This document shows, in pieces, positions 806 to 27,343 of a stretch of 64,000 nucleotides of DNA. The stretch lies in the IMG/VR virus record IMGVR_UViG_3300028883_000032, positions 62,001 to 126,000 of that record, one strand, 5' to 3'. The position numbers and the translations under genes were made by a program. How positions within the stretch are numbered: the first letter of the stretch is position 1; each line of letters opens with the position of its first letter. The notes under the pieces are model-generated. The model saw only the letters and a list, made by a program, of their open reading frames with translations, had not been told where the DNA came from and did not search any database.

Positions 806-861
806 CAGTGAACCCGAAATTGGACTAATGCATGGAAGGCCTGTAAGTGATGATTTGATCG

Positions 862-1308: not shown

Positions 1309-1720
1309 TTTCTTACTTATTAAGTACCGTCATGGAATTAATCATGGCGACGAATCAGTGGAACATGGAGTTGTGGGTATTCCCGCGGGAAGTCACATTT
1401 CTGGATCAAAGGCTTTTCAAGAAACAAGCCCACACAATAAGCTGTATGGCGCAATTTATGATGTAAACCAAAGAGCCATTGTCAGCTTGTTTACCAGTTT
1501 AGGAAACCCATATTTTACCGATGAGAGGGGAACTTTTAGACCCGATACTCGTGTACCTGGTGAAAATTGGGGAAGGCGGATTAATGTAATGATTCATAAA
1601 ACCAATAGAATCGTACCCCGCAATCAGTTTATAGAGTGGGGAGGAACCATTACAAAAGGTTCCGCAAATTACATGACGGAAGTTATGTGGAACAGGCTTC
1701 GCGACCACATGACGGCATAA
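1274..1720 (+). CDS. hypothetical protein
   Basis: ORF in the + strand operon, overlapping its neighbour. Confidence 0.6.
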   Translation: MSCTNRRTRMSNFLLIKYRHGINHGDESVEHGVVGIPAGSHISGSKAFQETSPHNKLYGAIYDVNQRAIVSLFTSLGNPYFTDERGTFRPDTRVPGENWGRRINVMIHKTNRIVPRNQFIEWGGTITKGSANYMTEVMWNRLRDHMTA

Positions 1721-1842
1721 TGCAGGCTTTTTATCGTCACCCTAGCTTTAACAAGTCTGCGGGGATTATTGATTTCCGCGGACTTGGTAAGCAGCGGGTA
1801 GGGCCTTACCAAATTTTAAACATGTTGTAAAATGGGAGAAGT

Positions 1843-2001
1843 ATGGTTATAGATGTAGAGAGATTAAAAAGAGAGATGGCGGAGGAAGCGAAACAACTTG
1901 AAAACTTTACTAGCCATTCTCTAGGCTACCCAGCATTTATTTTAAGACAGGCTTTAGAGTACATAACAATACTAGAGACAAAATTACAAAAGGACAGTTA
2001 G
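1843..2001 (+). CDS. small hypothetical protein (52 aa, not in ORF track)
   Basis: GGGAG SD then ATG; MVIDVERLKREMAEEAKQLENFTSHSLGYPAFILRQALEYITILETKLQKDS. Confidence 0.55.
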   Translation: MVIDVERLKREMAEEAKQLENFTSHSLGYPAFILRQALEYITILETKLQKDS

Positions 2002-2077
2002 AGTAACTTGGCCTATTACTGGCCTGTTGATTGGGCCATTCAGGAAGGTTGGCAGAGTGGTTTATTGCATCGGTCTT

Positions 2078-2744
2078 GAAAAACCACTTGATTTTTATAC
2101 CGCTGGTTGTTATATTATATAAACAACCAAGAGTATATTATGCACACTTGTAAACACTGCAAAAAAGAACTGGCTAACCCAAAACATCAGTACTGTTCTA
2201 ACCAATGTCAAGCTAATTATTTACGACAACGTAAAGTCGCCGCTTGGTTACGTGGGGAACATAATGGAATGAGGGGAAAAACTGGTACTGCTAAATGGAT
2301 TAAATGGTATTTGATTAATAAGTTTGGGGAAAAGTGTAGTAATTGTGGTTGGTCTGAAATAAACCCATTTACTGGCAACATACCTATTGAACTTAATCAT
2401 ATTGATGGGGATTTTACCAATAATAACGAAGCCAATTTAGAGCTTTTATGTCCCAACTGCCATTCACTAACTAACAGTTACAAGGGTGCAAACAAGAAAA
2501 AAGGCAGGCCTAGATCAAAGTATTACCGAGGTCTGTAAAATCGAGCAATACTAAAGAAATTTATTATTGCACTAGCCCTCAAATTCAGGGAAACCTCAGC
2601 ATGTAGAGATGGTGGTAATCCTGAGCTAAACCTATATGTAGGAAAGTGCAGAGACTTGACGGGGGCGGCCTAAGTTTAACAAATAAGGCAGAGAGAAAGT
2701 CCAGACCACAAACTAAACAGGCAGTGAAAACTGTAGATGGTAAG
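2078..2744 (+). mobile_element. Group I (IC3-like) self-splicing intron with homing endonuclease ORF
   Basis: Core elements AAATTCAGGGAAACC (2581), AATCCTGAGC (2617), GTGCAGAGACT (2646), GAGAGAAAGTCC (2691); P9 CAGT-GAAA-ACTG; follows a U and ends in G. Confidence 0.92.
2140..2538 (+). CDS. Intron-encoded HNH homing endonuclease with N-terminal zinc finger
   Basis: CKHC..YCSNQC, CSNC..ELNHIDGDFTNNNEANLELLCPNCHS (HNH motif). Confidence 0.9.
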   Translation: MHTCKHCKKELANPKHQYCSNQCQANYLRQRKVAAWLRGEHNGMRGKTGTAKWIKWYLINKFGEKCSNCGWSEINPFTGNIPIELNHIDGDFTNNNEANLELLCPNCHSLTNSYKGANKKKGRPRSKYYRGL

Positions 2745-2830
2745 GAAAACCGACGAGGCCTAAAAACCTCCCAGGGTTCGAATCCCTGACCTTCCTCCAC
2801 AAAACGACAAAATAAGAATCGGAGAGACAG

Positions 2831-3127
2831 ATGAAATTAGTAATTGGAAAAATTATTGACTATTCCGCCAAATTTTCTGATGGCAGCAGCATTAGCGGGC
2901 AGGTTATAGTACCCACTAATGATTCCTATCCAACGTATTACGAGAGAGTACTTGAGATTTTGAGAACCGGTAAATGCGGAGCAAAAATGGATGACATAAA
3001 CACATTACAAGTGGGTTACAGGAAATATACTGAATTTGCTATACACCCAAGTGTGTTTGATACACTGCCTTCTGCTTTACCAAAGACTAGAAAACATAAA
3101 GAATGTTCGGCTGATGGCCATGTTTAG
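2831..3127 (+). CDS. hypothetical protein
   Basis: GGAGAG SD, ORF in operon. Confidence 0.6.
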   Translation: MKLVIGKIIDYSAKFSDGSSISGQVIVPTNDSYPTYYERVLEILRTGKCGAKMDDINTLQVGYRKYTEFAIHPSVFDTLPSALPKTRKHKECSADGHV

Positions 3128-3797
3128 AAAATATGAAAAAACATTTAGATTGCCATCCGTTTTATTCGAGACTGGAAAGCGCGAATTATCTTCGGCTGAT
3201 CAGAAAAAACTACTTAATGGAAAAATTACTGTAGAAGAAAAAATTGATGGGGCTAATGTCGGAATAATAGGAACAAAGCCTGGAGAAGTATTTCGTACGC
3301 AAAAGCGGGGTTCTTTGGTGGGACCATCCGAACATGAGCAATTTAACAGATTTAAAGCTTGGACTGTGGGTCACGCAGATGACTTTAATAGTTTGCCAAA
3401 AGGAATTATAATTTATGGCGAATTTATGTGGGCGACACACCACATATTTTATAATAGCTTACCAGATTGGTTTATATGTTTTGATATCTGGGACAACTGT
3501 GAATATGTCTCACGTTTAGAGAAAGAAGAATGGTGCCAACAGTTAAATCTACAGTGTGTTCCCTTGATTTATGAAGGACCCGTTGCTTCAATAACCGAGT
3601 TGTTAGATTTGTTACCTGGAAAATCCGAATACAGCTCTGACCAAGAAAAAGAGGGCATAGTTGTAAAAAACTATAAAAAACAAATGCGTGCAAAACTTGT
3701 TAGGCCTAATTTCATAAAAGAGGTTAATGAAGATGGCACACATTGGATGACTAAATGGGATCCTAGAAAAGTTAATAAACTGCAAATGGGAGAATAA
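3114..3797 (+). CDS. RNA ligase (Rnl2-like nucleotidyltransferase)
   Basis: EEKIDGAN, YGEF, FDIW, EGIVVK, RAKLV motifs; no OB fold. Confidence 0.85.
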   Translation: MAMFRKYEKTFRLPSVLFETGKRELSSADQKKLLNGKITVEEKIDGANVGIIGTKPGEVFRTQKRGSLVGPSEHEQFNRFKAWTVGHADDFNSLPKGIIIYGEFMWATHHIFYNSLPDWFICFDIWDNCEYVSRLEKEEWCQQLNLQCVPLIYEGPVASITELLDLLPGKSEYSSDQEKEGIVVKNYKKQMRAKLVRPNFIKEVNEDGTHWMTKWDPRKVNKLQMGE

Positions 3798-4204
3798 TGA
3801 AAGTATTTTTGGGCGGTACCTGCGCCGGTAGTAAGTGGCGAGAAGAATTGATTCCTAAGCTAAAGTTGGACTACTTCAATCCAGTTGTTGATGATTGGGA
3901 TGAAATGGCATATATGCAAGAATTGTATGAGCGCGAACATTGTGATTTCGTGCTATACACAATAACTCCAGAAATGCAAGGGGTCTATTCTATCGCGGAA
4001 GTAGTTGACGATTCCAACAAAAGACCACATAAAACAATTCTTTGTATTTTGGGATCAAAGGAAGATTTTGACAATTCACACTTTAACTCATTGTATAAAG
4101 CTCTAACCAAAGTAGGTTTAATGGTTAGAAAAAATGGCGGTAAGTGCTTTGATTCTTTAACAAATGTGGCCCTATACTTAAATAGAATGAATAGGCAGCC
4201 ATAG
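3797..4204 (+). CDS. Nucleoside 2-deoxyribosyltransferase-like protein
   Basis: KVFLGGT..WRE..YFNPVVDDW..E.YEREHCD pattern. Confidence 0.75.
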   Translation: MKVFLGGTCAGSKWREELIPKLKLDYFNPVVDDWDEMAYMQELYEREHCDFVLYTITPEMQGVYSIAEVVDDSNKRPHKTILCILGSKEDFDNSHFNSLYKALTKVGLMVRKNGGKCFDSLTNVALYLNRMNRQP

Positions 4205-4218
4205 GGGTATAAGTAAGA

Positions 4219-4428
4219 ATGGTAAAATACAGGTTATGCCATCTGCAAAAAGGTCATGTGCATACAGTAAGTTACATCCCACAACCTTATGCAGTAGTTG
4301 GTAAAATATTATCTTTAAAGAAAGATCCCGGTTGGGAAGTGATGTCTGCAGGGAACCTTGTTAACCACGATGAAGTAATGGTCCAAAGAGATCTTTATCG
4401 GCATCACAGAGACATAACGGATGTTTAG
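4219..4428 (+). CDS. hypothetical protein
   Basis: 69 aa ORF filling the gap before tRNA-Cys. Confidence 0.6.
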   Translation: MVKYRLCHLQKGHVHTVSYIPQPYAVVGKILSLKKDPGWEVMSAGNLVNHDEVMVQRDLYRHHRDITDV

Positions 4429-4503
4429 GCTGGCGTAGCTAAGTTGGTTAAGGCGTCGGTCTGCAAAACCGTTCAATCGTGGGTTCGAATCCCACCGCTA
4501 GCT
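4429..4503 (+). tRNA. tRNA-Cys(GCA), CCA not encoded
   Basis: GCTGGCG/CGCTAGC acceptor, loop CT-GCA-AA, GTGGG-TTCGAAT-CCCAC T arm, U73 discriminator. Confidence 0.92.
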
Positions 4504-4524
4504 CTTTTAACAGGATAATAAAAA

Positions 4525-4809
4525 ATGGAACTTTTACATTTATCTGATGGTAAAACACTTGTTGTAAAACAAGTATTAAAACATGGTCCTCCTGAAGGAT
4601 TTGAGTATAATTTAGACTACCTAACACGTTCCGGCTACGAAGTTATTAAAATGCCTAATGGAATTGAAGTGATTGGAGAAATGGTAATAGATGCAAAATT
4701 TAAGGAACTTGATAATAGGAGATATTCACGGACGTTACGACTTAATGATGGACGTACTAAAACGTTGCCACTACGACCCTACGAAGGACCGTCTGATATG
4801 TCTTGGTGA
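4525..4809 (+). CDS. hypothetical protein (3' end overlaps phosphatase)
   Basis: AGGA SD; 119 nt overlap with next gene. Confidence 0.5.
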   Translation: MELLHLSDGKTLVVKQVLKHGPPEGFEYNLDYLTRSGYEVIKMPNGIEVIGEMVIDAKFKELDNRRYSRTLRLNDGRTKTLPLRPYEGPSDMSW

Positions 4810-5452
4810 CTTTGTAGATGGCTCCGAGAGAGTGAAAGATTGTTTAGAGTATCTATCGGAACAACCGAACATAGAACCAATATTTGGTAATCATGATAAA
4901 TGGTTCTTGGATTGGGTTCAAACGGGAGAAGACCCTGACCCGTGGTGGTTATATAACGGAGGTCCTGTAACTCTCAAAAGCTATAATTACTATGCAGGTA
5001 ATGCAAGATCAGAACAAGCGAAATATGAGTGCGCAATGCTTAGGTATTGTCCAGACTCCCGAATACCTAGAAAACATGTTGAATTTATTCGAAATGCCCG
5101 TTTATACTATGAAACAGATAATTGGGTTGCTATGCATGGAGGGTTTAGGCCCGAAGTGGGGTTCAAGAAAGAGAATCCTGAAAACATAATGTGGGACCGT
5201 GATCTATTTTATCAGCATTGGCAAAAATTGCCAAAAGATCACAAATTAGTAATCGTAGGCCATACGCCCACGATGGCTGTTACTGGAATTCCAGAACCTA
5301 TATTTAGATATAAGACATTTGGCAAAGACAAAAAGCTTATGTTAATAAATATAGACACTGGTGGAAAAATTGGGAGTGCTTTGTGTGTACTTAATCCAGA
5401 CACACTAGAATGGTGGACTAGTAAAAAAGAGACAAATCCGAAAAACTGGTAA
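4691..5452 (+). CDS. Calcineurin-like metallophosphoesterase (Ser/Thr phosphatase family)
   Basis: GDIHG, GDFVDG, GNHD, HGG, GHTP, DTG motifs. Confidence 0.92.
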   Translation: MQNLRNLIIGDIHGRYDLMMDVLKRCHYDPTKDRLICLGDFVDGSERVKDCLEYLSEQPNIEPIFGNHDKWFLDWVQTGEDPDPWWLYNGGPVTLKSYNYYAGNARSEQAKYECAMLRYCPDSRIPRKHVEFIRNARLYYETDNWVAMHGGFRPEVGFKKENPENIMWDRDLFYQHWQKLPKDHKLVIVGHTPTMAVTGIPEPIFRYKTFGKDKKLMLINIDTGGKIGSALCVLNPDTLEWWTSKKETNPKNW

Positions 5453-5464
5453 CCATAATTAGTA

Positions 5465-6268
5465 ATGGTCAATCGCTATTATACAGACATTAATGCTTAT
5501 GATTTGCTTGATCCCAAGCATGAAAGGATACTAGCAACTCGTGCATTACTTGGTGACGACGCTGCAAGAGATGAACTAATAACATCAAATTTAAGATTTG
5601 TTGTATCTGTAGCTAAACAATATGTTAACCAAGGAATACCGCTGGAAGACCTAATTTCCGAAGGAAATTTGGGGCTTATAACTGCGGTAGAAAAATATGA
5701 CCCGACTAAGAATTATAAGTTTATTACTTATGCTTCTTACTGGATTAGACAAAGTATAATGAAAGCGATAGCGGAGCAGAACCGCACAATTCGTATTCCT
5801 ACGAATAAAGTGGCCCAGCTCTCAAAAGTTCGACAAGCCGAAGATCAGTTAGAGATGCAACTTGAACGTAAGCCAACTTTGGAAGAAGTTCAAGAGCACT
5901 TAGGAGATGATTTCGACGTAGCCTCTGTGGTTGAATACCAAGACAGGCCATTGGGCCTTAATGGATCAACTAATGAAGAACAAGATCTCATCGAAATGAT
6001 ACCAGACCCCAATTCTGAAAATCCGGATGAGTCCCTTCGTGAAACCATGTTTAATGAAGAACTTGGCGAAATAATGAGGGATTGTACAGAAAGAGAAAAA
6101 GATATACTCTATCTGTACTACGGTTTAGGCACGGGTGATAAAATGACATTGGAACAAATTGGATACCTACACGGCATTTGTCGCGAGCGTGTTCGACAGA
6201 TAAAGGCTAAAACAATTGATTTCATAAAGTCACACCCAAATTTAGATACACTAAAGGAGTTTCTATAA
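5465..6268 (+). CDS. RNA polymerase sigma70-family factor lacking region 1.1
   Basis: NLRFVVSVAKQY, DLISEGNLGL, FITYASYWIRQ, RTIRIP, TLEQIG..RERVRQI. Confidence 0.95.
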   Translation: MVNRYYTDINAYDLLDPKHERILATRALLGDDAARDELITSNLRFVVSVAKQYVNQGIPLEDLISEGNLGLITAVEKYDPTKNYKFITYASYWIRQSIMKAIAEQNRTIRIPTNKVAQLSKVRQAEDQLEMQLERKPTLEEVQEHLGDDFDVASVVEYQDRPLGLNGSTNEEQDLIEMIPDPNSENPDESLRETMFNEELGEIMRDCTEREKDILYLYYGLGTGDKMTLEQIGYLHGICRERVRQIKAKTIDFIKSHPNLDTLKEFL

Positions 6269-6270
6269 CA

Positions 6271-6831
6271 ATGCGATATTTTCTGGCGGTGCTGTTAATA
6301 ATAGCATTTCCAGGGGTACTTCTAACCAACTCTTCTTCTGTCGAGGAAGAGTTGCGTTTTTTAAAAAATACACCTGACTTTGTAACAGAATCGTTAATAC
6401 CAGATCATATATTTGATTGTAGTGATGTTAGGGTAGTTGTAACAGCATATAACTCCCTAGAATCACAATGTGATGATACCCCGTTTATTACAGCAACGGG
6501 AGACTCAACAAAATGGGGCGGAATAGCTGTAAGCCGTCCACTATTAAAACGATGGCCTTATGGGTCTATTGTTATGATTGAAGGCTATAACCACCCTTTC
6601 GTCGTGTTTGACACGATGAACAAGAGATTTAGAGAGCCGCGGGTTGACATATGGCACGAGTCTTATGACTGGGCCATCTCCCAAGGGGTGCAAAGAAACA
6701 TTCGGGCAGTCAAAATTGGCCAAATCCCGAAAAACCAAATTAAGTATTTTGAGCCCTCAGCTTACAATACAAAAAACGTGGAATTATGTTACAACGATAG
6801 AAGACTTGAAAGAATGTATATTATTTTGTAG
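6271..6831 (+). CDS. 3D-domain (MltA-like) cell-wall hydrolase with signal peptide
   Basis: Hydrophobic N-terminus; VTAYNS..TPFITATG..IAVSR..DTMN..RVDIW. Confidence 0.85.
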   Translation: MRYFLAVLLIIAFPGVLLTNSSSVEEELRFLKNTPDFVTESLIPDHIFDCSDVRVVVTAYNSLESQCDDTPFITATGDSTKWGGIAVSRPLLKRWPYGSIVMIEGYNHPFVVFDTMNKRFREPRVDIWHESYDWAISQGVQRNIRAVKIGQIPKNQIKYFEPSAYNTKNVELCYNDRRLERMYIIL

Positions 6832-8584
6832 CAATGAATCCGCAATATCGTTTGACATTGAAACAAATTCACTGGACCCACGTTTAGGAGACATTTTGTC
6901 GATTCAAGTCGGTACTTATGATCGACAATATGTTATTAAAGTTCACAGTTTTACTAAAACCCAACTAAAACCCTTATTTAGAGTATTGGAAGATGAGGAT
7001 TACTTAATTTTAGGTCACAACTTAAAATTTGATTTCCAATGGATATATCACCATTATGGTGTAGTATTAAATAATGTTTATGACACTTATATTATTGAAG
7101 GCATACTTAACAAAGGAATGCACAACCACCGGTTAAACCTGAATGCCGTATTGGAGGTTTATGTACATGGGGTTGATCTTGACAAGGGAGAGCGCAAAAC
7201 CTTCGTAAACCGGTTACCATTCGAAGACTTTACTGAAAAGCAGATAGAGTATAGTGCCCTAGATGTTAAATTCCTATCAAAAATATATAAGGGTCAAATT
7301 AAATTAGCTCGTGAATATCAATGCGAGGCATTGGTGTGGTTGGAATGTGATGCTGTTATTCCAACGGCAATGATGGAATATAATGGGATTTATATAGATC
7401 AAAAGCATTGGCTTAGTTTGTCTAATGTGGCCCGCGAAGCGGCCGATAAAGCTAAAGAAGTATTGGACGAATATTTTAAAGATGTGAATTTGGGAAATCA
7501 GCTGAGCTTGTTTGATTACCCCATGATAAACTACGATTCTCCAGCACAAATGAAACGAGCTTTATCAGACTTACTTGAAAAAGACATAGAAAGTACTGGT
7601 AAAGAGGAACTTATGAAGTTGGACCATCCAGCAGCTAGGGCTCTTCTTGATTACAGAGAGCAGTCCAAATTAATAGCAGCGTTTGGTCCAGAGTACCTTC
7701 GTAAATATATACACCCGATTACAAATAGAATTCATTCTCAGATAGATCAACTAGGTGCAGATTCTGGAAGATTTTCTTGTCGCCGACCAAATTTAATGCA
7801 GATTCCTCACTTACAAATTTATAGGGAAGCCTTCTGCGTTGAAGATCCTATATTAAGGCGTATGATAGCAGCAGATTATTCTGGGTGTGAACTAAGGCTA
7901 ATTGCCGAATTAAGCGGTGAGGAAGAGTGGATATTTTGCCTCAAAAAGGGCTATGACATGCATAGCTATGTTGCCGCTTTGCTATTTGATCTTGACTATC
8001 ATAAAATAACAGAAAACAATAAAATAAAATCTGAATTTAAAGAGTTTCGTCTTAAGGCAAAAAGCATTAATTTCGGTGTAGCTTATGGCATGGGACCGGG
8101 ACGATTGGCAATAAGCTTAAAAATAAGCTTCGAAGAGGCGGCCGCACTGCTTGATAAATTCTGGGAGAAATTTCCAAAGATAAAACGACTTCTAGACAGA
8201 TTAGTAAGAGAGGGAATAAACAACGGATACGCACAATCTCCTCTAGACGGAAGACGGCGTTGGTTACTAGACTTCAATACTCGTGTTCCAAGAGAAAGAG
8301 CACACGCTGGCAATATTTGTAAAAACTTACCATTTCAAGGAGGTAACGCCAGCATTATTAAGCGTGCAATGTGTCTTATCCAAGATAAGTTTTTTGAACA
8401 TCCTGAATGGGAAGCAAAACTTTTATTGTGCGTACACGATGAAATTATTGCTACATGCAAAAAAGATAACAGTGAAACAGTAAAAGAAGTTATCGAGAAG
8501 TGCATGCTTGAAGCAGCATACTTGTTTGTAGACAAAGTACCGATGGAAGTAGATGTTGAATTAGGCAAGCATTGGATACACTAA
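6644..8584 (+). CDS. polA: Family A DNA polymerase with 3'-5' exonuclease (true start probably about 6750-6780)
   Basis: FDIET (Exo I), GHNLKFD, YSALDV, SGRFSCRRPNLMQIP, ADYSGCELR (motif A), KAKSINFGVAYG (B), VHDEI (C). Confidence 0.95.
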   Translation: MTYGTSLMTGPSPKGCKETFGQSKLAKSRKTKLSILSPQLTIQKTWNYVTTIEDLKECILFCSNESAISFDIETNSLDPRLGDILSIQVGTYDRQYVIKVHSFTKTQLKPLFRVLEDEDYLILGHNLKFDFQWIYHHYGVVLNNVYDTYIIEGILNKGMHNHRLNLNAVLEVYVHGVDLDKGERKTFVNRLPFEDFTEKQIEYSALDVKFLSKIYKGQIKLAREYQCEALVWLECDAVIPTAMMEYNGIYIDQKHWLSLSNVAREAADKAKEVLDEYFKDVNLGNQLSLFDYPMINYDSPAQMKRALSDLLEKDIESTGKEELMKLDHPAARALLDYREQSKLIAAFGPEYLRKYIHPITNRIHSQIDQLGADSGRFSCRRPNLMQIPHLQIYREAFCVEDPILRRMIAADYSGCELRLIAELSGEEEWIFCLKKGYDMHSYVAALLFDLDYHKITENNKIKSEFKEFRLKAKSINFGVAYGMGPGRLAISLKISFEEAAALLDKFWEKFPKIKRLLDRLVREGINNGYAQSPLDGRRRWLLDFNTRVPRERAHAGNICKNLPFQGGNASIIKRAMCLIQDKFFEHPEWEAKLLLCVHDEIIATCKKDNSETVKEVIEKCMLEAAYLFVDKVPMEVDVELGKHWIH

Positions 8585-8596
8585 CCAAGGATAATT

Positions 8597-9295
8597 ATGC
8601 CAAACAACGTACTAAATAAATTACGAATTGAGGGCCCAAAATTTCGAATTCAGGAAGTTTGGGATTTTTTACGTACCACGGACGACGACGGCGAAACTCA
8701 CCCAATTAGTTTCAATAAATTAGTCCCAATGCCAAAGTCTCTAAAATGTAAAGATGGAAGCTATGGGGATTTAGCCTATCGAGTATTATTTAAAGAATCC
8801 TTGCCGGGAGACATGTGGTTGGACGAGGATAATGAAGAAGAGGAAAAATTTTATTCCATGTCAAGGATGATAAGAAATGAGGCAACAATACTAGCACATC
8901 AATATCGAGAGAATATTTTAAAATACGGACATAAAACGTGGTATGGGTGGAGCATAACTAATTGGGGCACAAAGTGGGATGCCTATGACCAAATGTTAGA
9001 TGGCGATACGTTGATGTTTAATACGGCGTGGTCAGGAGTACCAAAAATAATAGAAAAGATATCTGAAAAATTTCCAGACTTAACACTTCACTACCAATTT
9101 GCGGATGAAGACATAGGATGTAATGTTGGAGATATGACTTTTTACGGAGGAAGATGTGTTGACGACACTTCACCGAAAAATCAAACAAAAGCTGCTTATG
9201 ACCTAGCTTTTGAACTAAGACCAGGGGCCAATAGCTATTACAGGCTTGTAAATGGTGAATGGAAATACGACGACGACTGGGAAATAAACCAATAA
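8597..9295 (+). CDS. DUF1281/YubB ferredoxin-like family protein
   Basis: MPNNV.N.L, SFNKLVPMP, WYGWSITNWGTKWDA, FNTAWS. Confidence 0.8.
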   Translation: MPNNVLNKLRIEGPKFRIQEVWDFLRTTDDDGETHPISFNKLVPMPKSLKCKDGSYGDLAYRVLFKESLPGDMWLDEDNEEEEKFYSMSRMIRNEATILAHQYRENILKYGHKTWYGWSITNWGTKWDAYDQMLDGDTLMFNTAWSGVPKIIEKISEKFPDLTLHYQFADEDIGCNVGDMTFYGGRCVDDTSPKNQTKAAYDLAFELRPGANSYYRLVNGEWKYDDDWEINQ

Positions 9296-9302
9296 ATCCG
9301 CA

Positions 9303-9944
9303 ATGCTATTAGATGCGTTAACAAAACTAGAATCTTGCAATTTACGTGACCTAACAAGATCATTAAGACATGATGGTCTGTGTAGAATATATGAGAGCTT
9401 ACCAGCATCGAAATGGGTTAACATTTTTAACCTAGATGGAGAAGTACAAAGCGGTTTATACAACGAAGTAAGATTGTACAATTTGAAAAGCAAGAGTTTT
9501 AAGCACGGAGAGTTCCTGCAATACCGCCTTTCTGCGACATTTTTAAAAAATAATTTAGATGAGGTGTTGTCTGAATGTATAATAAAAGCTCTTGAAGCCT
9601 GTTCATGTATATCAAAATTCAATTTAAATATAAAACACACTGTAAACAATGATGATTATGAAATGTTGGGGCATGAATTCCATAACCGGAATTTTCGAAC
9701 AGTTCTTACAAGTCCCGATCGACAACATTTAATAAATAGCTGGACTTATGATCTTGGGATGAAGGTATACACTAGTGGGAAACTACAGTTTGGCACCATG
9801 TACCTATTAACTCCAACCGCTATTAAGGCCTATTCTATTAATGGCCCACAAATTAACCGCGATAATGATAGATTTTGGGCAAATTACCACATGGGAGCAA
9901 ACGTGGATGCTTTGCAAGTTACTAAACTAAAATTTAACGAATAG
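9303..9944 (+). CDS. Divergent, shortened paralog of the major capsid protein
   Basis: Collinear with 26366-27343: RSLRHDGLCRI/RSVNHDQLVKV, NSWTYDLG/NGWTYTTIFG, GTMYLLTP/GTMYGFTP. Confidence 0.7.
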   Translation: MLLDALTKLESCNLRDLTRSLRHDGLCRIYESLPASKWVNIFNLDGEVQSGLYNEVRLYNLKSKSFKHGEFLQYRLSATFLKNNLDEVLSECIIKALEACSCISKFNLNIKHTVNNDDYEMLGHEFHNRNFRTVLTSPDRQHLINSWTYDLGMKVYTSGKLQFGTMYLLTPTAIKAYSINGPQINRDNDRFWANYHMGANVDALQVTKLKFNE

Positions 9945-9949
9945 AACTC

Positions 9950-10150
9950 ATGGAAAATAATATGCCATTACATAAAAAAGTAGACTGTGGGAAATGTCCA
10001 GTTTGTGGAAGCAAACTCAAAATAGAGGCGACTAGAGTCCCGGGAGTAAATGTAAGAATGGGAAGCCGATTTTTTGGTACATGGCGAGATCAAATATACT
10101 GCGAGCAATGCCAGATAATTTTTAGAGACAAACCAAGAACTAATAAGTGA
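9950..10150 (+). CDS. small zinc-ribbon protein
   Basis: CPVC..CEQC. Confidence 0.65.
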   Translation: MENNMPLHKKVDCGKCPVCGSKLKIEATRVPGVNVRMGSRFFGTWRDQIYCEQCQIIFRDKPRTNK

Positions 10151-10788
10151 ACGTAATGATCATTGGGCCAATGGCCAGCGGTAAAACATCCGCGGCGAAC
10201 CATCTTGTAGAAAAATTTGGGTTTAAGTGTATATCATTAGCTGGCCCAATAAAAGACATGGAAAGTAAAATAGACAATGCAGTAGGTATAGCTGATTTTA
10301 CTGACATAATATTTCCCCACTTCTCTGGAATTAGAGAATTCGGAGATTCCCACATCTCCAAAATGGTTAAGGTTCTACAAGAAGCGAAAGAAATAGAAAG
10401 AGAAGAGCCGAAACCACGTAAAAGGCTGCAATTCATCGGAACTGAAGGTGGGCGCCAAAGAATACACCCAGACATTTGGATAAAAATACTTCGTAATACC
10501 ATAAATAAATCTCCTTCAAACACCCAATGGGTTATTGATGATGTAAGATTTATAAATGAGTTTAATTCTCTTAATGACCTATTTCTACCCATAAAATTAA
10601 CAGTATCCAAAAAAGTCCAACTGCAGAGGTTGAGAAATTTATACCCTAACTTTGATGGTAGTGTATTACGACACTCGTCTGAACTGGATTTTTACAAAAT
10701 GGAAGTTGGACGAAAATACATCGTAAATGCAAATGTCCCCCTTGAACGAATGAATTTGGATATAGAAACAAAACTAGGATTAAAATGA
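10147..10788 (+). CDS. Deoxynucleoside monophosphate kinase
   Basis: GPMASGKT P-loop, RKRLQFIGTEGGR, IDDVRFINE. Confidence 0.88.
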   Translation: MNVMIIGPMASGKTSAANHLVEKFGFKCISLAGPIKDMESKIDNAVGIADFTDIIFPHFSGIREFGDSHISKMVKVLQEAKEIEREEPKPRKRLQFIGTEGGRQRIHPDIWIKILRNTINKSPSNTQWVIDDVRFINEFNSLNDLFLPIKLTVSKKVQLQRLRNLYPNFDGSVLRHSSELDFYKMEVGRKYIVNANVPLERMNLDIETKLGLK

Positions 10789-11492
10789 TACAATATTATA
10801 TAGACTGTGATGGGGTAACTTTTCATTATGTTGAACCTTTTTTGGATTTTATCAATGACTTGATGGGTAAAAAACTATACAGCGCCAAACAAATTACCCA
10901 ATATAATATCCCGTCATGCCTTGGAATGCCAGATAGAGAATTTTTTGCATATTTGAATAAATATGTGGAAAAGCAAAAATTTGCTTCCCAGCCTTTTATG
11001 GATGGGGCTATCGAGGGCATTTTTCATATTATTTCAAATACAAGAAAAACCGGCAGTGTAAACTATATTACTGTGAGACCTATTGGAGCTTACTTACAAA
11101 CTATAAAAAGCATAAGAGGTTTTTTCAAGACCCTTATTAAAAGGTTTTACAATGAGGATTTGGTACTTCCTGAAGATTTTTATAGACTGCTTTTGGGTAA
11201 CTATAATGGAACCCCAAAATGGAAAATAATAAAGGTGTTAAATGAGGGATCAAGCGCGTCTGTATTGATAGACGACAACCCAGAGTTTATCCATGAAGTT
11301 ATGGAACACTGCCCGGAAACTCTAACAATTTGGTTTAATCATAAAGGTTTTCTAAAAAACACCTGTCACGCTCATGTTAAAGTACAAAGCTGGGACGAGG
11401 TAATAGATATACTTGGAGACGACATTAAACCCGAAACAATCAATAAATTAAAGACTGCTTCGGGTTTCGGTGAACAGCTGTCTATTCTATAA
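10785..11492 (+). CDS. HAD-family 5'(3')-deoxyribonucleotidase-like protein
   Basis: IDCDGV, YITVR, LIDDNP. Confidence 0.75.
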   Translation: MIQYYIDCDGVTFHYVEPFLDFINDLMGKKLYSAKQITQYNIPSCLGMPDREFFAYLNKYVEKQKFASQPFMDGAIEGIFHIISNTRKTGSVNYITVRPIGAYLQTIKSIRGFFKTLIKRFYNEDLVLPEDFYRLLLGNYNGTPKWKIIKVLNEGSSASVLIDDNPEFIHEVMEHCPETLTIWFNHKGFLKNTCHAHVKVQSWDEVIDILGDDIKPETINKLKTASGFGEQLSIL

Positions 11493-11493
11493 A

Positions 11494-11520
11494 ATACCCC
11501 TCGTTGAGGGGTATTTTTTT
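11494..11520. terminator. Bidirectional intrinsic terminator between convergent modules
   Basis: ATACCCCTC-GTT-GAGGGGTAT flanked by A and T tracts. Confidence 0.85.
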
Positions 11521-12148
11521 AGCCTGAAATGACTCCCATACTACAAGCCAATAAACCTACATTCTCCACAAGAACAGTCCTATCAGATGCGAAGGATATG
11601 TTATGTTGATAAACATATGCATCTTCAAGATAAAAAGCTCCCATAAAGTTATATTCCCCATCAAACAGAGCAAACATTATGTCCGTTGGTTTGTTTAGGA
11701 ATTCCGAAGCCAAGTTAATGATGAATGTTTTATTCCCATCAAATGTAAATCCAAAATTCGGGTATTCGCCAAAATCTAGAGTTGTCTCGAGTTCATCGGG
11801 ACCTATAGGATAAAGAGAACCTATTAAGGAGTCCCCGTCAATTAACAACCTCCCCAAATTTGCATTTATTATTGTTCTTCCGGGAATTATATAAGACTGG
11901 TAAGAACCAAGTTCAAACAGTTGAATTAATTTCTTGTTCTGCTGTATTTGTGCTGTCTGGACGACACCAATGGCATTAAAGTCATTTATTGTAGGTGGAG
12001 TACCGATCCGTTCGCCATCTGCTGTGTGCTGTCTAGCACCGACAACTATTAACGTCGAATTTAATAAAGTTTTACCAGTTTTAATGTCAGGATTAACATG
12101 GCCACTAGAGCGGCCAACTAAGTCGCTCCAGTTGGCTACGGTAATCAT
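11519..12148 (-). CDS. Tail tube-like protein, paralog 2
   Basis: Paralog of 12167-12826 (AIGVVQ..QNK.L.QLFELGS..IPGRT..ANL.R..IDGDSL), downstream of sheath. Confidence 0.7.
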   Translation of the reverse strand: MITVANWSDLVGRSSGHVNPDIKTGKTLLNSTLIVVGARQHTADGERIGTPPTINDFNAIGVVQTAQIQQNKKLIQLFELGSYQSYIIPGRTIINANLGRLLIDGDSLIGSLYPIGPDELETTLDFGEYPNFGFTFDGNKTFIINLASEFLNKPTDIMFALFDGEYNFMGAFYLEDAYVYQHNISFASDRTVLVENVGLLACSMGVISG

Positions 12149-12166: not shown

Positions 12167-12826
12167 TTATACAGATTGTACCGATTGTATAGAATTTGCC
12201 CTTAACGAACAACTTTCTAACACAACTGTTTGTTGCGAAGCCACGGAGATTTGGTGACTTTGTAGATACGCATCTTTCAAGTAAAAACCGCCCATTAATT
12301 CGTGGTCCCCATCATTAAACCAAAATGCTAAATCGATGGGATTATCAAAGAACTCTGACGCCAAGTTTATAAGGAAAGAATGTCCTTGAGGTGTATCAAA
12401 TCCAGGGTCTGAAGTCATTTGACCTGCAGTTCCAGCCGAAAATCCATTTTCATCAGTTGGGTACATTATGGCCATTAAACTATCACCATCAATCATAATA
12501 CGTGATAGGTTAGCTTGAACAACAGTTCGTCCAGGAACAAAGTATGATGCTCTTGACCCTAATTCGAATAATTGTGCTAGCTGTTTATTCTGAACTACGG
12601 AGGCATTTTGAATAACTCCGATGGCCATGAAACTTCCTGGACCATCGGTATTATCCCCCGGTACAGCCACTGACCCCACCCCGTTCTCAACTGTTACATT
12701 AACTTTACGGGCCGCAATAACAATAGTTTGAGCGGATGTAAATTGTTTGCCATTGGTTATTAAATCATCAACATGGACATCATTTTTTCCAATAACACTA
12801 GTTGTCCAATCATTTACTGTACGCAT
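12167..12826 (-). CDS. Tail tube protein
   Basis: Directly after sheath; beta-rich tube pattern (QLFELGS, YLQSHQISV). Confidence 0.75.
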   Translation of the reverse strand: MRTVNDWTTSVIGKNDVHVDDLITNGKQFTSAQTIVIAARKVNVTVENGVGSVAVPGDNTDGPGSFMAIGVIQNASVVQNKQLAQLFELGSRASYFVPGRTVVQANLSRIMIDGDSLMAIMYPTDENGFSAGTAGQMTSDPGFDTPQGHSFLINLASEFFDNPIDLAFWFNDGDHELMGGFYLKDAYLQSHQISVASQQTVVLESCSLRANSIQSVQSV

Positions 12827-12843: not shown

Positions 12844-14427
12844 TTAGAAACCAACTGTAAAGCTGATTTTGTTAACAGGGAACTTTACCTCAACATCAAT
12901 ATTTGCGTATACGGTGTCATCTTCTGAGTAAAGTGTTACCAATGTAAATGAGTTGAGAACTCCTTCACGAACCAAATGCTTACCTACAGCAGTTATTGTT
13001 GTTGCCAATAGTTTCAAGAAGCTCGGACTAATAACGTTACGACCAATCAAACCGGATACAGAACTACGAAGGAATTTACCAGTATAATCCAGAGAAGCTC
13101 TAATTGAGTCCTCTTGACGCTTTGTGTCACTGCGATCTGTAGATAATTGGTGTCTTGTTACAATGGGAGCATTTTTAGTTACTTGGTACAGCCACCAAGT
13201 TCCCCCACCTGCCGCAGTATCTATCTGAGTTTCACTTAAGAAATCAGATGCATACTTAAGTCTTGCCGCACCGCTTAATGGTAAATTTGTGAGAGGCTGT
13301 TGTGGTGCAACTCCCGAACGGCGTCCAGCAGCCATTGCAGCGCCATAATAAGATGGTAATGGAATCAAAACATTGACAAAAAACTTATCACTGTCAATTA
13401 GTTGTTGGCGAACGGTTTCCGTAATTTCAGTATCTGCATATAAAATTGTACCGTCGCTAAGCGTAACACGTTCTTCCAATAAAGCGTTTAATGCCAACGA
13501 CCCATTAATATTATTTATATAGTTTGTTGTAAGTTGAGACACGTGCCATCTAACAGAAAAATATAAGGTGTCAGGGTATACCCAACGAGCACGTTCCTGT
13601 AAATTACTTATAGCCGCGGACTTTATATTTTGCATTGTCTTTGTTTTACCGCCTGAATCTACCAATGCTGCGGTTGTAGCGACATCGTCAGAATCTACCC
13701 ATGAGATGGTATTTCCGAAGAAAACTATACGCTCTTTCTTTGCCGCGGTTGCGCTCATGTTTACACAATGAGTTTGCCAAGTTCCACGTATAGTAGTATT
13801 AGTGGTGAGTGGTGCAAAGGCATAAGGTTCTGTTTGTAGTGCAAAAGCCTCCTGTGCCTCCTCGTGATCCGTGGCTGTTTGACCGTCAACACCATAGCCA
13901 TAGACTGCTTTACCAGCGTTATTTAGTGCCAGCCTTAATCCGAATGCTAGTGGGTTAAGAGGATCGATCTTACCACACCTGTTTGTCACATCATCCAAAC
14001 TTTCAAACAACACCACACTATTTACATTGGTGCGTAATTCACGCCAACCAATCAGTATTGATCCACCATCATAAGTACTTCCTAAAGAACCACTGATGGT
14101 TACATCGGTACCGTCTGGATTAACATAAAATTCTGTTGTATCCAAAGGTTTACGTGCGCCAAGAGTGCTAACAACGTCGACATAAACACTTTCTGTGTCC
14201 ACATTCGTACCATCACCAATAAGGCCCGAAAATGATACCGTAGTTCCAGTGGAATTATTGTAAGTATCTGGGTACGAATCCTTATATACAGAATCCGGAT
14301 TTTCTGTAATTTCGTGTACGTAGTAGCATTCACCAACAATCGCTGCTGGCAATAATGGAGTGTCAAGGTTAGGTGCCGCAGTCTTTTGAACGTAAGTTAC
14401 TTCGGAACCTGGTTTTGTGTAAGCCAT
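12844..14427 (-). CDS. Tail sheath protein
   Basis: MAY.KPG.EV N-terminus, HCVNMS...KERI, QPLTN, IVTRHQLSTD, VKFPVNKISFTV C-terminus. Confidence 0.88.
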   Translation of the reverse strand: MAYTKPGSEVTYVQKTAAPNLDTPLLPAAIVGECYYVHEITENPDSVYKDSYPDTYNNSTGTTVSFSGLIGDGTNVDTESVYVDVVSTLGARKPLDTTEFYVNPDGTDVTISGSLGSTYDGGSILIGWRELRTNVNSVVLFESLDDVTNRCGKIDPLNPLAFGLRLALNNAGKAVYGYGVDGQTATDHEEAQEAFALQTEPYAFAPLTTNTTIRGTWQTHCVNMSATAAKKERIVFFGNTISWVDSDDVATTAALVDSGGKTKTMQNIKSAAISNLQERARWVYPDTLYFSVRWHVSQLTTNYINNINGSLALNALLEERVTLSDGTILYADTEITETVRQQLIDSDKFFVNVLIPLPSYYGAAMAAGRRSGVAPQQPLTNLPLSGAARLKYASDFLSETQIDTAAGGGTWWLYQVTKNAPIVTRHQLSTDRSDTKRQEDSIRASLDYTGKFLRSSVSGLIGRNVISPSFLKLLATTITAVGKHLVREGVLNSFTLVTLYSEDDTVYANIDVEVKFPVNKISFTVGF

Positions 14428-26365: not shown

Positions 26366-27343
26366 TTAGTTAGTCCAGTATACCTTTGCCATTGAATAGG
26401 CGTTACCAATACCCATGCCGATAATCTCATAAAGACTCCAGCTGATAAGGTTACGTTTCTTTTCAATCCAGAACTTAACATCACCCAATATATAGGCGTG
26501 ACCCATATATTGTTTTGGTGTAAAGCCGTACATTGTGCCAGGAGGTACAAGTTCGCCTTTATTGGTAACAATAAGATCTTTACCAAAGATTGTGGTGTAG
26601 GTCCAGCCGTTTACTGTGGTGTTTTCTGCGATTGCGTTACCGCGATCATCAGCACGCCACAAAAGGATCTTGTTGTAATCTTCACGATTCATGAGGATTA
26701 CGGAGCAATCATAACGTCTAGCATCAAAATCATGCTCGTAAATTGTTGATCCAGCTGAATTCTTTAAACTCGTACTACCAACGGTACTTGAATTCTCAAG
26801 CAAGTTGAATAGACGTACAAACAACATCGGATCAAGCTCATTATTATTTGTATTGTAGGCTGTAGAATTTTCGTACTTACCTGACAATGCAACGGCATCT
26901 TCGACGCGACTAATGAATCCTTGGTCTTCAATTGCATGAAGATCTTTTAGAGAGTTATTTTCGATGATCTCTGTTAGAGGCATCTCATAAGCTAAAAGCT
27001 CTTCTTCTACTTTCTGGTATTCTCTTGAGCTGATTCCGTAAAATGCAATTTCATAACGTTCACCCATGATGTACTCAGAATCTGGTGCACCACGGAAGTT
27101 AATTTCCATCGCTACTGAATTGGGCTCGAGATCCACGACCTTAACCAGCTGGTCGTGATTTACAGAGCGTTGACATTCTGCCTTTGTAATAGGCTGAGGC
27201 ATCATAATTTTGCGTGAGAAAGAAACTTCACGCATGCGCTGACGAATGTATGAGCTTGTGCTCATCGCAAGCTTGGCGCGATCCTCTGGAGAATCCAACG
27301 ACTCAACAAACAGTTCATTAAGAATTTCAGGACTTGTTGCCAT
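26366..27343 (-). CDS. Major capsid protein (HK97-like fold inferred)
   Basis: Follows protease, scaffolds and decoration gene, ends at a strong terminator; C-terminal P-domain pattern GKDLIVT..GTMYGF..YEIIGMGIGN. Confidence 0.75.
   Translation of the reverse strand: MATSPEILNELFVESLDSPEDRAKLAMSTSSYIRQRMREVSFSRKIMMPQPITKAECQRSVNHDQLVKVVDLEPNSVAMEINFRGAPDSEYIMGERYEIAFYGISSREYQKVEEELLAYEMPLTEIIENNSLKDLHAIEDQGFISRVEDAVALSGKYENSTAYNTNNNELDPMLFVRLFNLLENSSTVGSTSLKNSAGSTIYEHDFDARRYDCSVILMNREDYNKILLWRADDRGNAIAENTTVNGWTYTTIFGKDLIVTNKGELVPPGTMYGFTPKQYMGHAYILGDVKFWIEKKRNLISWSLYEIIGMGIGNAYSMAKVYWTN

What the first reader, a model, noticed from the sequence alone, without database searches (positions are those of the whole stretch)
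9303..9944. Second, shortened major-capsid-protein gene placed in the replication operon
Seen: end-to-end collinear similarity to the MCP at 26366-27343: RSLRHDGLCRIYESLPAS vs RSVNHDQLVKVVDLEPNS; LYNLKS..FLQYRLSATFLKNN vs FYGISS..LLAYEMPLTEIIENN; NSWTYDLG..GTMYLLTP..AYSING vs NGWTY..FG..GTMYGFTP..AYILG; similar terminal strands. It lacks the N-arm (including the KLA site) and part of the central region, and lies on the opposite strand between polA and the dNMP kinase. Inference: an early-expressed capsid mimic. It could be a decoy for capsid-sensing immunity (CapRel- and Lit-type systems detect MCPs), a dominant-negative against satellites or competitors, or a repurposed HK97 fold.
Basis: partly seen in the sequence, partly recalled or inferred. 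Interest (0 to 1): 0.75.

Follow-up and report, generated by a model that had tools for sequence, protein, structure and literature searches.

The report
Capsid-gene-derived orphan gene beside polA
A 213-codon orphan gene in the DNA-replication operon of an uncultured 207-kb marine-sediment phage carries a real but very diverged piece of a major-capsid-protein gene. It cannot be shown to keep the capsid fold, and nothing indicates what it does.

Summary
The ORF at 9303-9944 (+) and the capsid gene (MCP) at 26366-27343 (-) exist as described, and the quoted motifs are there.

**What holds up**
- Residues about 13-85 of ORF213, perhaps to about 120, are homologous to the MCP family. The family HMM gives 17 bits, E 2e-4 over all 1365 genome ORFs, and 0 of 20,000 shuffles reach that score.
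- Four disjoint sub-family HMMs all find it.
- Ten related genomes show no second hit.

**What does not hold up**
- The C-terminal half matches only the resident MCP (Z 3.3). It is at chance level against the family profile.
- AlphaFold2 fails, with pLDDT 32 alone and 45 with an MCP alignment. The HK97 fold is therefore unproven.

**What else is known**
- ORF213 has no homologue in two protein collections, 5.8 billion clusters (word-indexed search) and 1.84 billion representatives (exhaustive search).
- Its frame is open against odds of about 5e-8.
- It lies in a three-gene, 1.56-kb insertion between polA and the dNMP kinase. The one syntenic relative lacks this insertion.
- Its capsid-like piece resembles distant family members more than the resident MCP, so it is not a recent in-genome copy.
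- A second capsid-derived orphan lies outside the window.

The homology is supported. The decoy or mimic function has no evidence. Interest is moderate.

The parts
9303..9944 (+). ORF213: an orphan protein-coding gene of 213 aa, derived in part from a capsid gene.
   Evidence: - It is the only open frame of the six here; the others carry 4-27 stops. The chance of 213 open codons at this composition is about 5e-8.
- The codon-usage score is 0.137 in frame, against <= 0.036 in the other five frames. That is the 19th percentile of genes in this genome.
- It matches only itself among 5.8 billion protein clusters (word-indexed search) and 1.84 billion representatives (exhaustive search).
- An independent Logan contig of the same run covers 7500-12000 with 0 differences.
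9339..9557 (+). Codons 13-85: the stretch with demonstrable homology to MCP residues about 54-130. By inference this is the E-loop hairpin and the start of the spine helix of the P-domain.
   Evidence: - hhalign gives E 9.5e-5.
- The family HMM gives 17 bits, E 2.2e-4 over 1365 ORFs, and 0 of 20,000 shuffles reach it.
- Sub-family HMMs reach 19.5 bits.
- tblastn finds 36% identity to the MCP of related genome G005 over residues 14-81.
- Family-conserved R, H, D, L, P, G, G and E residues are retained.
- The mapping to the E-loop and spine helix is inferred from general knowledge of the HK97 fold. A long helix at residues 78-103 is predicted in both AlphaFold2 runs.
9729..9815 (+). Codons 143-171: a collinear match to residues 243-276 of the resident MCP only (the NxWTY ... 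GTMY..TP motifs). Homology is plausible but unproven.
   Evidence: - Smith-Waterman gives 45, Z 3.3, with 8 of 1000 shuffles reaching it.
- The resident MCP ranks first of 120 family members for this segment; the others sit near background at about 31.
- The best local alignment falls at the collinear place in 107 of 120 MCPs.
- The family HMM gives E 37, and conserved-column matches are at the shuffle level.
26366..27343 (-). The resident HK97-fold major capsid protein, 325 aa.
   Evidence: - PHROG 2522 'major head protein', E 1.5e-9.
- NCBIfam NF042927 'HK97-fold major capsid protein', E 8.4e-9, below the curated cut-off.
- A profile of 41 homologues matches PDB 6wkk_A 'Gp27 major capsid protein' at E 1.3e-15 over nearly the full length.
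- 166 homologues were found, many on 130-215 kb contigs.
8585..10146 (+). A three-gene insertion between polA and the dNMP kinase, specific to this lineage. It holds the Api92-like gene, ORF213 and a zinc-ribbon gene.
   Evidence: In G001, the only relative with this region syntenic (MCP 51% identical), the last polA ORF is followed after 12 nt by the dNMP kinase. None of the three genes is present there.
8597..9295 (+). Upstream neighbour: an Api92-like (DUF1281_C) protein of unknown function.
   Evidence: - Pfam PF18406, E 1.9e-14.
- PHROG 12644, E 8e-31.
- Scattered homologues occur in diverse phages.
9950..10150 (+). Downstream neighbour: a 66-aa zinc-ribbon protein with four cysteines.
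   Evidence: There are only weak Pfam matches below the curated cut-offs: DUF2089 zinc ribbon at 4e-4 and Lar_restr_allev at 9e-4.
6644..8584 (+). Family A DNA polymerase (polA), upstream in the same operon.
   Evidence: PHROG 17, E 3.7e-102.
10147..10788 (+). dNMP kinase, downstream in the same operon.
   Evidence: - PHROG 139, E 1.7e-27.
- Pfam DNMK, 5e-6.

Best explanation
ORF213 is a real gene specific to this lineage. Its first 40-55% descends from a major-capsid-protein gene of this phage family.

**Shown.**
- Codons about 13-85, perhaps to about 120, are homologous to MCP residues about 54-130.
- The gene has no N-arm. About 100 residues of the MCP centre have no counterpart.
- It is an orphan.
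- It lies in a 1.56-kb three-gene insertion in the polA to dNMP-kinase operon, separated from its neighbours by gaps of 5 and 7 nt.
- Its capsid-like piece scores better against distant MCP subclades than against the resident MCP.

**Inferred.**
- It arose from an old or horizontally captured MCP fragment, not from a recent in-genome duplication. It has since diverged beyond nucleotide similarity while selection kept the frame open.
- What survives corresponds to the E-loop and spine helix (P-domain) part of the HK97 fold.
- Without the N-arm and most of the A-domain it cannot be a shell-forming subunit.
- It is made with the replication genes.

**Most likely mode of action (low confidence, about 0.2-0.25).** It is a non-structural binding module. 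Through the retained E-loop and P-domain surface it contacts HK97-type capsid subunits, or factors that recognise them, and so modulates or blocks capsid assembly in trans. The satellite protein Ccm, a capsid-protein homologue, acts on its helper's capsid in this way.
For: - **Homology.** See, with negative controls in ten related genomes against the own genome.
- **Real gene.** The frame is open against p of about 5e-8 while the other frames are full of stops. Codon usage is frame-specific. The gene is tightly packed with its neighbours, and no terminator-like site lies on the + strand between 6926 and 11492. A second assembler gives the same sequence.
- **Insertion.** G001 has polA directly followed by the dNMP kinase.
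- **Not a recent copy.** There is no DNA similarity to the MCP gene. HMM bits rise from 8.5 for the own clade to 19.5 for the most distant subset. The N-segment Smith-Waterman score rises with distance from the resident MCP, Spearman 0.42.
- **A recurring process.** A second MCP-derived orphan in the same genome shows that capsid-gene pieces repeatedly became new ORFs here. It is L086:4328-4900, with hhalign probability 90% and E 1.5e-6 to MCP 172-283.
- **Precedent.** A capsid homologue acting in trans is known: SaPIbov5 Ccm (PMC8569155).
Against: - The fold is not confirmed. pLDDT is 32 and 45, and Foldseek's best E is 0.67.
- The C-terminal half is at chance level against the family.
- The scores are modest at 17-19.5 bits. 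In an all-against-all search of the genome's genes, the ORF213-MCP pair ranks only 18th, at E 0.0025.
- No start-proximal Shine-Dalgarno motif is visible.
- There are no orthologues, so selection cannot be measured.
- There is no expression data.
- Only one syntenic comparator exists.
- The proposed binding function rests on analogy alone.
Confidence: 0.6

Rival explanations
1. One reading: an early-expressed capsid mimic that acts as a decoy or inhibitor for host immunity that senses major capsid proteins (CapRel-, Lit-, Avs- or Thoeris-type sensors).
For: - The gene is MCP-derived.
- It sits in the replication operon rather than the structural module.
- It lies in a variable accessory insertion.
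- Many defence systems are triggered by MCPs (PMC13728456; 10.64898/2026.01.04.697583).
Against: - Identity to the resident MCP is only 20-25%, and the piece is nearer to other subclades. That makes poor mimicry of the protein a sensor would see.
- No folded HK97 model was obtained.
- It is a singleton with no family, whereas useful anti-defence genes usually spread.
- In the two sources read on MCP-triggered defence, 'decoy' never refers to a phage-encoded MCP decoy.
- The host and its defences are unknown, since the source is a marine-sediment metagenome.
Confidence: 0.1
2. A decaying relic. A captured or duplicated MCP fragment is carried along in the operon and has no function of its own.
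For: - It is an orphan with no orthologues.
- Codon-usage score is lowish, at the 19th percentile.
- No Shine-Dalgarno motif is visible.
- AlphaFold2 cannot fold it.
- A second MCP-like orphan suggests frequent fragment capture.
Against: - Divergence is so deep that no DNA similarity remains, yet 213 codons stay open in a 35% G+C stretch where the chance is about 5e-8.
- Several family-invariant residues are kept.
- The spacing to both neighbours is exact and operon-like.
Confidence: 0.12
3. Chance resemblance. ORF213 is an unrelated orphan, and the motifs were picked out by eye.
For: - Pairwise E is only 0.003, and 0.3 when all window ORFs are the database.
- The C-half is at chance against the family.
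- Structure gives no support.
- Protein-language-model features point elsewhere, to Rep-like clusters.
Against: - The HMM gives E 2e-4 to 4e-5 genome-wide, and 0 of 20,000 shuffles reach the score.
- The result replicates with four disjoint MCP subsets.
- The MCPs of other phages are hit independently.
- There is no second hit in ten control genomes.
Confidence: 0.07
4. A minor structural protein: a specialised vertex or accessory capsid subunit, like T4 gp24 relative to gp23.
For: - It is homologous to an MCP.
- Paralogous vertex proteins are established in T4-like phages (from my own knowledge).
Against: - It lacks the N-arm and about 100 central residues.
- It lies 16 kb from the MCP, on the other strand, inside the replication operon.
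- It is absent from ten related genomes with the same capsid gene.
Confidence: 0.04
5. A rolling-circle-type replication initiator (Rep_trans, RepD-like or Phage_CRI), as the protein-language-model look-alikes suggest.
For: - Atlas feature hits score 0.89-0.93 to clusters carrying these Pfam families, for both the whole protein and residues 8-105.
- The gene lies in a replication operon.
Against: - The tool's own calibration says such scores arise in 4-10% of shuffled proteins. It also says consistency within a family arises in a third of them.
- Pfam and NCBIfam scans up to E 10 find nothing.
- phmmer against PDB sequences finds nothing.
Confidence: 0.03

Closest known systems
HK97-fold major capsid proteins of this phage group (resident MCP at 26366-27343; PDB 6wkk_A 'Gp27 major capsid protein')
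   Same: There is demonstrable sequence homology over MCP residues about 54-130. Family-conserved residues are retained (R..HD.L...P...G...G..E), and a long helix is predicted where the spine helix should be.
   Different: - It is 213 aa against about 300-325 aa.
- It has no N-arm, and about 100 central residues are absent.
- The C-terminal half is not recognisable by the family profile.
- It lies outside the structural module.
- No confident HK97 model was obtained.
SaPIbov5 Ccm, a satellite-encoded homologue of the helper phage capsid protein that redirects capsid assembly (PMC8569155)
   Same: It is a capsid-protein homologue encoded outside the helper's capsid module. Ccm acts in trans on capsid assembly, which is the model for the mechanism proposed here.
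   Different: - Ccm is encoded by a satellite, not by the phage.
- From my own knowledge, Ccm is a complete capsid-protein homologue that co-assembles into shells.
- ORF213 is truncated, sits in the phage's own replication operon, and has no shown activity.
T4 gp24, the vertex paralogue of MCP gp23 (from my own knowledge)
   Same: It is an intragenomic relative of the major capsid protein.
   Different: - gp24 is full length, adjacent to gp23, expressed late and a virion component.
- None of these holds or could be shown for ORF213.
The second MCP paralogue of rudiviruses, which is not incorporated into virions (stated in 10.1101/2023.08.24.554615)
   Same: It is a capsid-protein paralogue that is apparently non-structural.
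   Different: It belongs to another virus realm and another fold (an alpha-helix bundle). It is a full-length paralogue.
Encapsulin shell proteins, an HK97 fold repurposed outside virions (PMC13669383)
   Same: It would be an HK97-derived protein with a non-capsid role.
   Different: Encapsulins keep the whole fold and assemble shells next to cargo genes. ORF213 lacks the parts needed for shell formation and has no cargo-like neighbour.

Membership tests
HK97-fold major capsid protein (this phage group; PHROG 2522, NCBIfam NF042927) | Significant match to the family profile | tested here: inconclusive
   - The custom family HMM gives 17-19.5 bits, E 2e-4 to 4e-5 within the genome. It covers only profile positions 56-162 of 309.
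- The curated libraries (Pfam, PHROGs, NCBIfam) give no MCP hit for ORF213.
HK97-fold major capsid protein (this phage group; PHROG 2522, NCBIfam NF042927) | Full domain set: N-arm, E-loop, P-domain and complete A-domain | tested here: not met
   - The ORF starts at the equivalent of MCP residue about 47, and no upstream extension is possible because a stop lies 5 codons before the ATG.
- About 100 central residues are missing in the alignment.
- The N-arm, middle and C-terminal sub-HMMs do not hit it.
HK97-fold major capsid protein (this phage group; PHROG 2522, NCBIfam NF042927) | HK97 fold in a structural model | tested here: inconclusive
   - AlphaFold2 from the single sequence gives pLDDT 32.6.
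- With 59 MCP rows it gives pLDDT 45.4 and pTM 0.38.
- Foldseek against PDB gives a best E of 0.67 with TM 0.15-0.2. The weak hits are mostly HK97 capsids, but this is circular because of the alignment used.
HK97-fold major capsid protein (this phage group; PHROG 2522, NCBIfam NF042927) | Encoded in the head-morphogenesis module | tested here: not met
   It lies between polA and the dNMP kinase on the + strand. The structural genes run on the - strand from 11519 onward.
HK97-fold major capsid protein (this phage group; PHROG 2522, NCBIfam NF042927) | Component of the virion shell | not testable with these tools
   The phage is uncultured and comes from a marine-sediment metagenome.
Vertex-type MCP paralogue (T4 gp24-like) | Full-length paralogue adjacent to the MCP gene and conserved among relatives | tested here: not met
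   - It is truncated.
- It lies 16 kb away on the other strand.
- It is absent from ten related genomes.
Capsid-assembly-redirecting MCP homologue (SaPIbov5 Ccm type) | Encoded by a satellite, and co-assembles with the helper's capsid protein | tested here: not met
   - It is encoded in the replication operon of a 207-kb phage genome rated 100% complete by CheckV, not in a satellite.
- Co-assembly cannot be tested here.
Decoy or inhibitor of capsid-sensing immunity (no defined family) | Binds an MCP sensor without activating it, and is expressed before the MCP | not testable with these tools
   - The host and its defence systems are unknown.
- No RNA run was listed.
- PADLOC is silent, but it covers defence genes rather than anti-defence genes.
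Rolling-circle Rep (Rep_trans, RepD-like_N, Phage_CRI) | Match to the family HMM | tested here: not met
   - A Pfam scan up to E 10 finds no family.
- The only support is language-model look-alikes at 0.89-0.93, within the range that shuffled proteins reach.

The most novel reading that the evidence does not exclude
This phage repeatedly turns pieces of capsid genes into new non-structural proteins: ORF213 from the E-loop and P-domain part, and the 190-aa orphan at genome 164327-164899 from the A-domain part. These proteins would be expressed apart from the capsid module and would bind HK97 capsid subunits or their sensors. They would sabotage rival phages or satellites, or blunt capsid-triggered immunity. 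That would be a new class of capsid-derived weapons or decoys.
Probability: 0.1. Interest if true: 0.8.

Novelty: new variant of a known kind. Interest (0 to 1): 0.4.

Why it matters
If the homology stands, this is a clear case of an orphan gene whose origin can still be traced. A fragment of a structural gene was moved into an early operon and kept open by selection. That bears on how the huge pool of phage orphan genes arises. If the product binds capsid subunits or capsid sensors, it would be a phage-encoded counterpart of satellite proteins such as Ccm, or the first capsid-derived anti-sensor. As it stands it is a single gene in a single uncultured genome with no functional evidence, so its present value is as a lead.

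Tried and rejected
- **Homologue searches for ORF213.** The word-indexed search of 5.8 billion clusters and the exhaustive phmmer search of 1.84 billion representatives found only ORF213 itself. tblastn against 50,697 phage records found nothing below E 2. phmmer against PDB sequences found nothing up to E 10.
- **Structure.** AlphaFold2 from the single sequence gave pLDDT 32. With an MCP-based alignment it gave pLDDT 45. Foldseek against PDB was not significant and is circular given that alignment. The ESM Atlas model has pLDDT 0.30, so its structural matches are meaningless.
- **Rep-like lead from language-model features.** No HMM supports it, so I rejected it.
- **Family-level test of the C-terminal half.** The C-terminal sub-HMM, an HMM restricted to the resident MCP's own clade and a count of conserved columns against shuffles all gave no signal.
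- **Synteny through neighbours.** Single-protein scans of IMG/VR with the Api92-like protein and the dNMP kinase found nothing. An alignment-based scan found only G001 as a usable relative. Four of the five large relatives searched for these two genes lack both.
- **DNA-level similarity between ORF213 and the MCP gene.** None.
- **Repeats flanking the insertion.** Only short matches of chance size.
- **Promoter and terminator scan.** Counts equal the shuffled expectation.
- **Expression.** No RNA run was listed.
- **ORF213 against the second MCP-like orphan.** No direct similarity, E 13.
- **PDB 6wkk.** No paper mentioning the code was found. My recollection that it is Bacillus phage G is unverified.

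Full report
**Setting.** The window is bases 62001-126000 of a 206,856-bp IMG/VR virus record rated 100% complete by CheckV. It was assembled from a marine-sediment metagenome. An independent Logan contig of the same run covers 7500-12000 without a single difference, at depth 48.5. The region is therefore not an assembly chimera. The + strand from 80 to 11492 carries these genes:
- DNA ligase;
- an HNH endonuclease;
- RNA ligase;
- a phosphatase;
- a sigma factor;
- polA (6644-8584);
- an Api92-like protein (8597-9295);
- ORF213 (9303-9944);
- a 66-aa zinc-ribbon protein (9950-10150);
- a dNMP kinase (10147-10788);
- one more gene.

The - strand from 11519 onward carries tail-tube-like, sheath and head genes, including the MCP at 26366-27343.

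**The capsid gene.** The 325-aa protein is a genuine HK97-type major capsid protein.
- It matches PHROG 2522 'major head protein' at 1.5e-9.
- It matches NCBIfam 'HK97-fold major capsid protein' at 8.4e-9, below the curated cut-off.
- A profile of 41 of its 166 homologues matches the solved capsid protein 6wkk_A at E 1.3e-15 over almost its full length.

Its relatives sit on uncultured contigs of 130-215 kb.

**Is the resemblance real?** The coordinates and all quoted motifs are correct. For the N-terminal part the answer is yes.
- Pairwise BLASTP alone is weak: E 0.003, 20% identity, 30% gaps. E is 0.3 when all window ORFs are the database.
- The Smith-Waterman score of residues 1-100 is 6.3 sd above shuffles, with 0 of 1000 reaching it.
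- hhalign of the MCP profile against ORF213 gives E 9.5e-5. It aligns MCP 54-125 with ORF213 13-79.
- The family HMM, searched with all filters off against all 1365 ORFs of at least 50 aa in the genome, ranks ORF213 directly after the MCP, at E 2.2e-4 and 17 bits.
- None of 20,000 shuffled ORF213 sequences reaches 17 bits; the best reaches 14.8.
- HMMs built from four disjoint subsets of the family all rank ORF213 among the top two non-self hits, at 8.5, 13.8, 17.1 and 19.5 bits. The best E is 3.6e-5.
- A six-frame search of related phage genomes with ORF213 hits their capsid genes, with 36% identity over residues 14-81 in G005.
- As a negative control, the same profile search at E <= 1 finds exactly one locus in each of ten related 155-215 kb genomes, but two in this genome.

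In an all-against-all phmmer search of 314 genes, the ORF213-MCP pair ranks 18th of 26 pairs, at E 0.0025. The pairwise signal alone would be borderline. The profile evidence is what carries the case.

**The C-terminal half.** This part is equivocal.
- Residues 143-171 align collinearly with residues 243-276 of the resident MCP. The score is 45, Z 3.3, with 8 of 1000 shuffles reaching it.
- The resident MCP is the best of 120 family members for this segment.
- The best local alignment falls at the collinear place in 107 of 120 MCPs.
- Against that, a family HMM restricted to the C-terminal third gives E 37.
- An HMM of the resident MCP's own clade does not pick it up either.
- After MAFFT placement ORF213 matches 6 of 28 conserved columns, the same as shuffled controls at 6.3 +/- 1.9.

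I rate homology of this half as plausible (about 0.5) but not shown.

**Is it a gene?**
- The frame is open for 213 codons in a 35% G+C stretch where the chance of that is about 5e-8. The other five frames carry 4-27 stops.
- Codon usage is frame-specific and within the range of this genome's genes, at the 19th percentile.
- The gene is separated from its neighbours by 7 and 5 nt. The next two genes overlap by 4 nt.
- No terminator-like site lies on the + strand between 6926 and 11492.
- No nucleotide similarity to the MCP gene remains. The divergence is therefore old, and the open frame implies selection.
- Against: no obvious ribosome-binding motif, no orthologue anywhere, and no RNA run listed.

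**Origin.** In G001 the order sigma factor, polA, dNMP kinase and next gene is conserved. G001 is the only relative in which this region is syntenic, and its MCP is 51% identical. There polA is followed after 12 nt by the kinase. The Api92-like gene, ORF213 and the zinc-ribbon gene are therefore a 1.56-kb insertion in this lineage.

The capsid-like piece of ORF213 scores higher against distant subclades than against the resident MCP or its close relatives. That argues against a recent in-genome duplication. It fits an old paralogue or a fragment captured from another member of the family.

A second orphan, outside the window at genome 164327-164899 (190 aa), matches the A-domain part of the MCP.
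- hhalign gives probability 90% and E 1.5e-6 for MCP 172-283.
- PHROG 544 'major head protein' matches at 0.0028.
- It has no other homologue.

It has no direct similarity to ORF213. Capsid-gene fragments have thus become new ORFs at least twice in this genome.

**Structure.**
- AlphaFold2 fails on the single sequence, with pLDDT 32.6.
- It reaches only pLDDT 45.4 and pTM 0.38 when given 59 MCP rows as the alignment.
- Foldseek then finds nothing below E 0.67. The weak hits are mostly HK97 capsids, but that is expected from the alignment supplied and is not independent evidence.
- Both runs predict a long helix at residues 78-103, where the spine helix of the HK97 P-domain would fall.
- The assignment of residues 13-77 to the E-loop region is my inference from general knowledge of the fold.
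- Language-model look-alikes point to rolling-circle Rep families at scores that shuffled proteins also reach. No HMM supports this.

**What it most likely is and does.**
- Shown: a gene derived in part from a capsid gene, truncated, found only in this genome, and sitting in an accessory insertion of the replication operon.
- Inferred: it cannot build a shell, because it has no N-arm and most of the A-domain is gone. It is co-transcribed with replication genes.
- My best guess for function is a binding module that uses the retained E-loop and P-domain surface to contact HK97 capsid subunits or proteins that recognise them. The satellite capsid homologue Ccm acts on its helper's capsid in this way (PMC8569155). 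I hold this with low confidence.
- The decoy reading is possible but unsupported. Similarity to the resident MCP is only 20-25%, the protein is a singleton, and the host and its defences are unknown. MCP-triggered defence systems do exist (PMC13728456; 10.64898/2026.01.04.697583). In neither of those two sources does 'decoy' refer to a phage-encoded MCP decoy.
- A functionless relic is disfavoured by the preserved frame. A vertex protein is disfavoured by the truncation, the location and the absence from relatives.

**Verdict.** The functional part is untested speculation. This is a new variant of a known kind (capsid-protein paralogues and derivatives). It is of moderate interest, mainly as a traceable origin of an orphan gene and as a lead for capsid-binding accessory proteins.

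Noticed in passing
Outside the window: genome 164327-164899 (+), which is L086:4328-4900: A second orphan ORF (190 aa) derives from a capsid gene, matching the A-domain part of the MCP. hhalign gives probability 90.3% and E 1.5e-6 for MCP 172-283. PHROG 544 'major head protein' matches at E 0.0028. It is a top-two non-self hit of four disjoint MCP sub-family HMMs. It has no other homologue among 5.8 billion clusters. It lies just after a glycosyltransferase gene.
   Followed up: partly
window 11519-12148 and 12167-12826 (-): Two tandem paralogous genes (phmmer E 2.5e-46) lie next to the tail sheath gene at 12844-14427. From their position they are presumably tail-tube proteins. The relative G001 has a single copy that matches both.
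   Followed up: partly
L085:8438-10807 (relative G001): In G001 the polA homologue is split into two ORFs by an intervening HNH-endonuclease-like ORF. That ORF is homologous to window 2107-2538. In the window polA is intact and the HNH gene lies 4 kb upstream.
   Followed up: no
window 5465-6268 (+): A phage-encoded RNA polymerase sigma factor (PHROG 351, E 5e-62) lies just upstream of polA and is conserved in G001. It may direct a phage-specific promoter class, which the sigma-70 consensus scan would not see.
   Followed up: no
window 9950-10150 (+): A 66-aa four-cysteine zinc-ribbon protein lies in the same insertion. It has a weak match, below the cut-off, to the restriction-alleviation protein Lar (E 9e-4).
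   Followed up: no
window 8597-9295 (+): An Api92-like (DUF1281_C) protein of unknown function has scattered homologues in very different phages: Prochlorococcus, Vibrio, Xanthomonas, Pseudomonas and Microbacterium phages, and gut phage contigs. That pattern fits a mobile accessory gene.
   Followed up: partly
window 4429-4504 and 54741-54816 (+): Two tRNA genes: Cys (GCA) and Arg (ACG).
   Followed up: no
window 6644-6831: The polA ORF as listed, from a TTG at 6644, overlaps the preceding gene (6271-6831) by 188 nt. The true polA start is probably further downstream.
   Followed up: no
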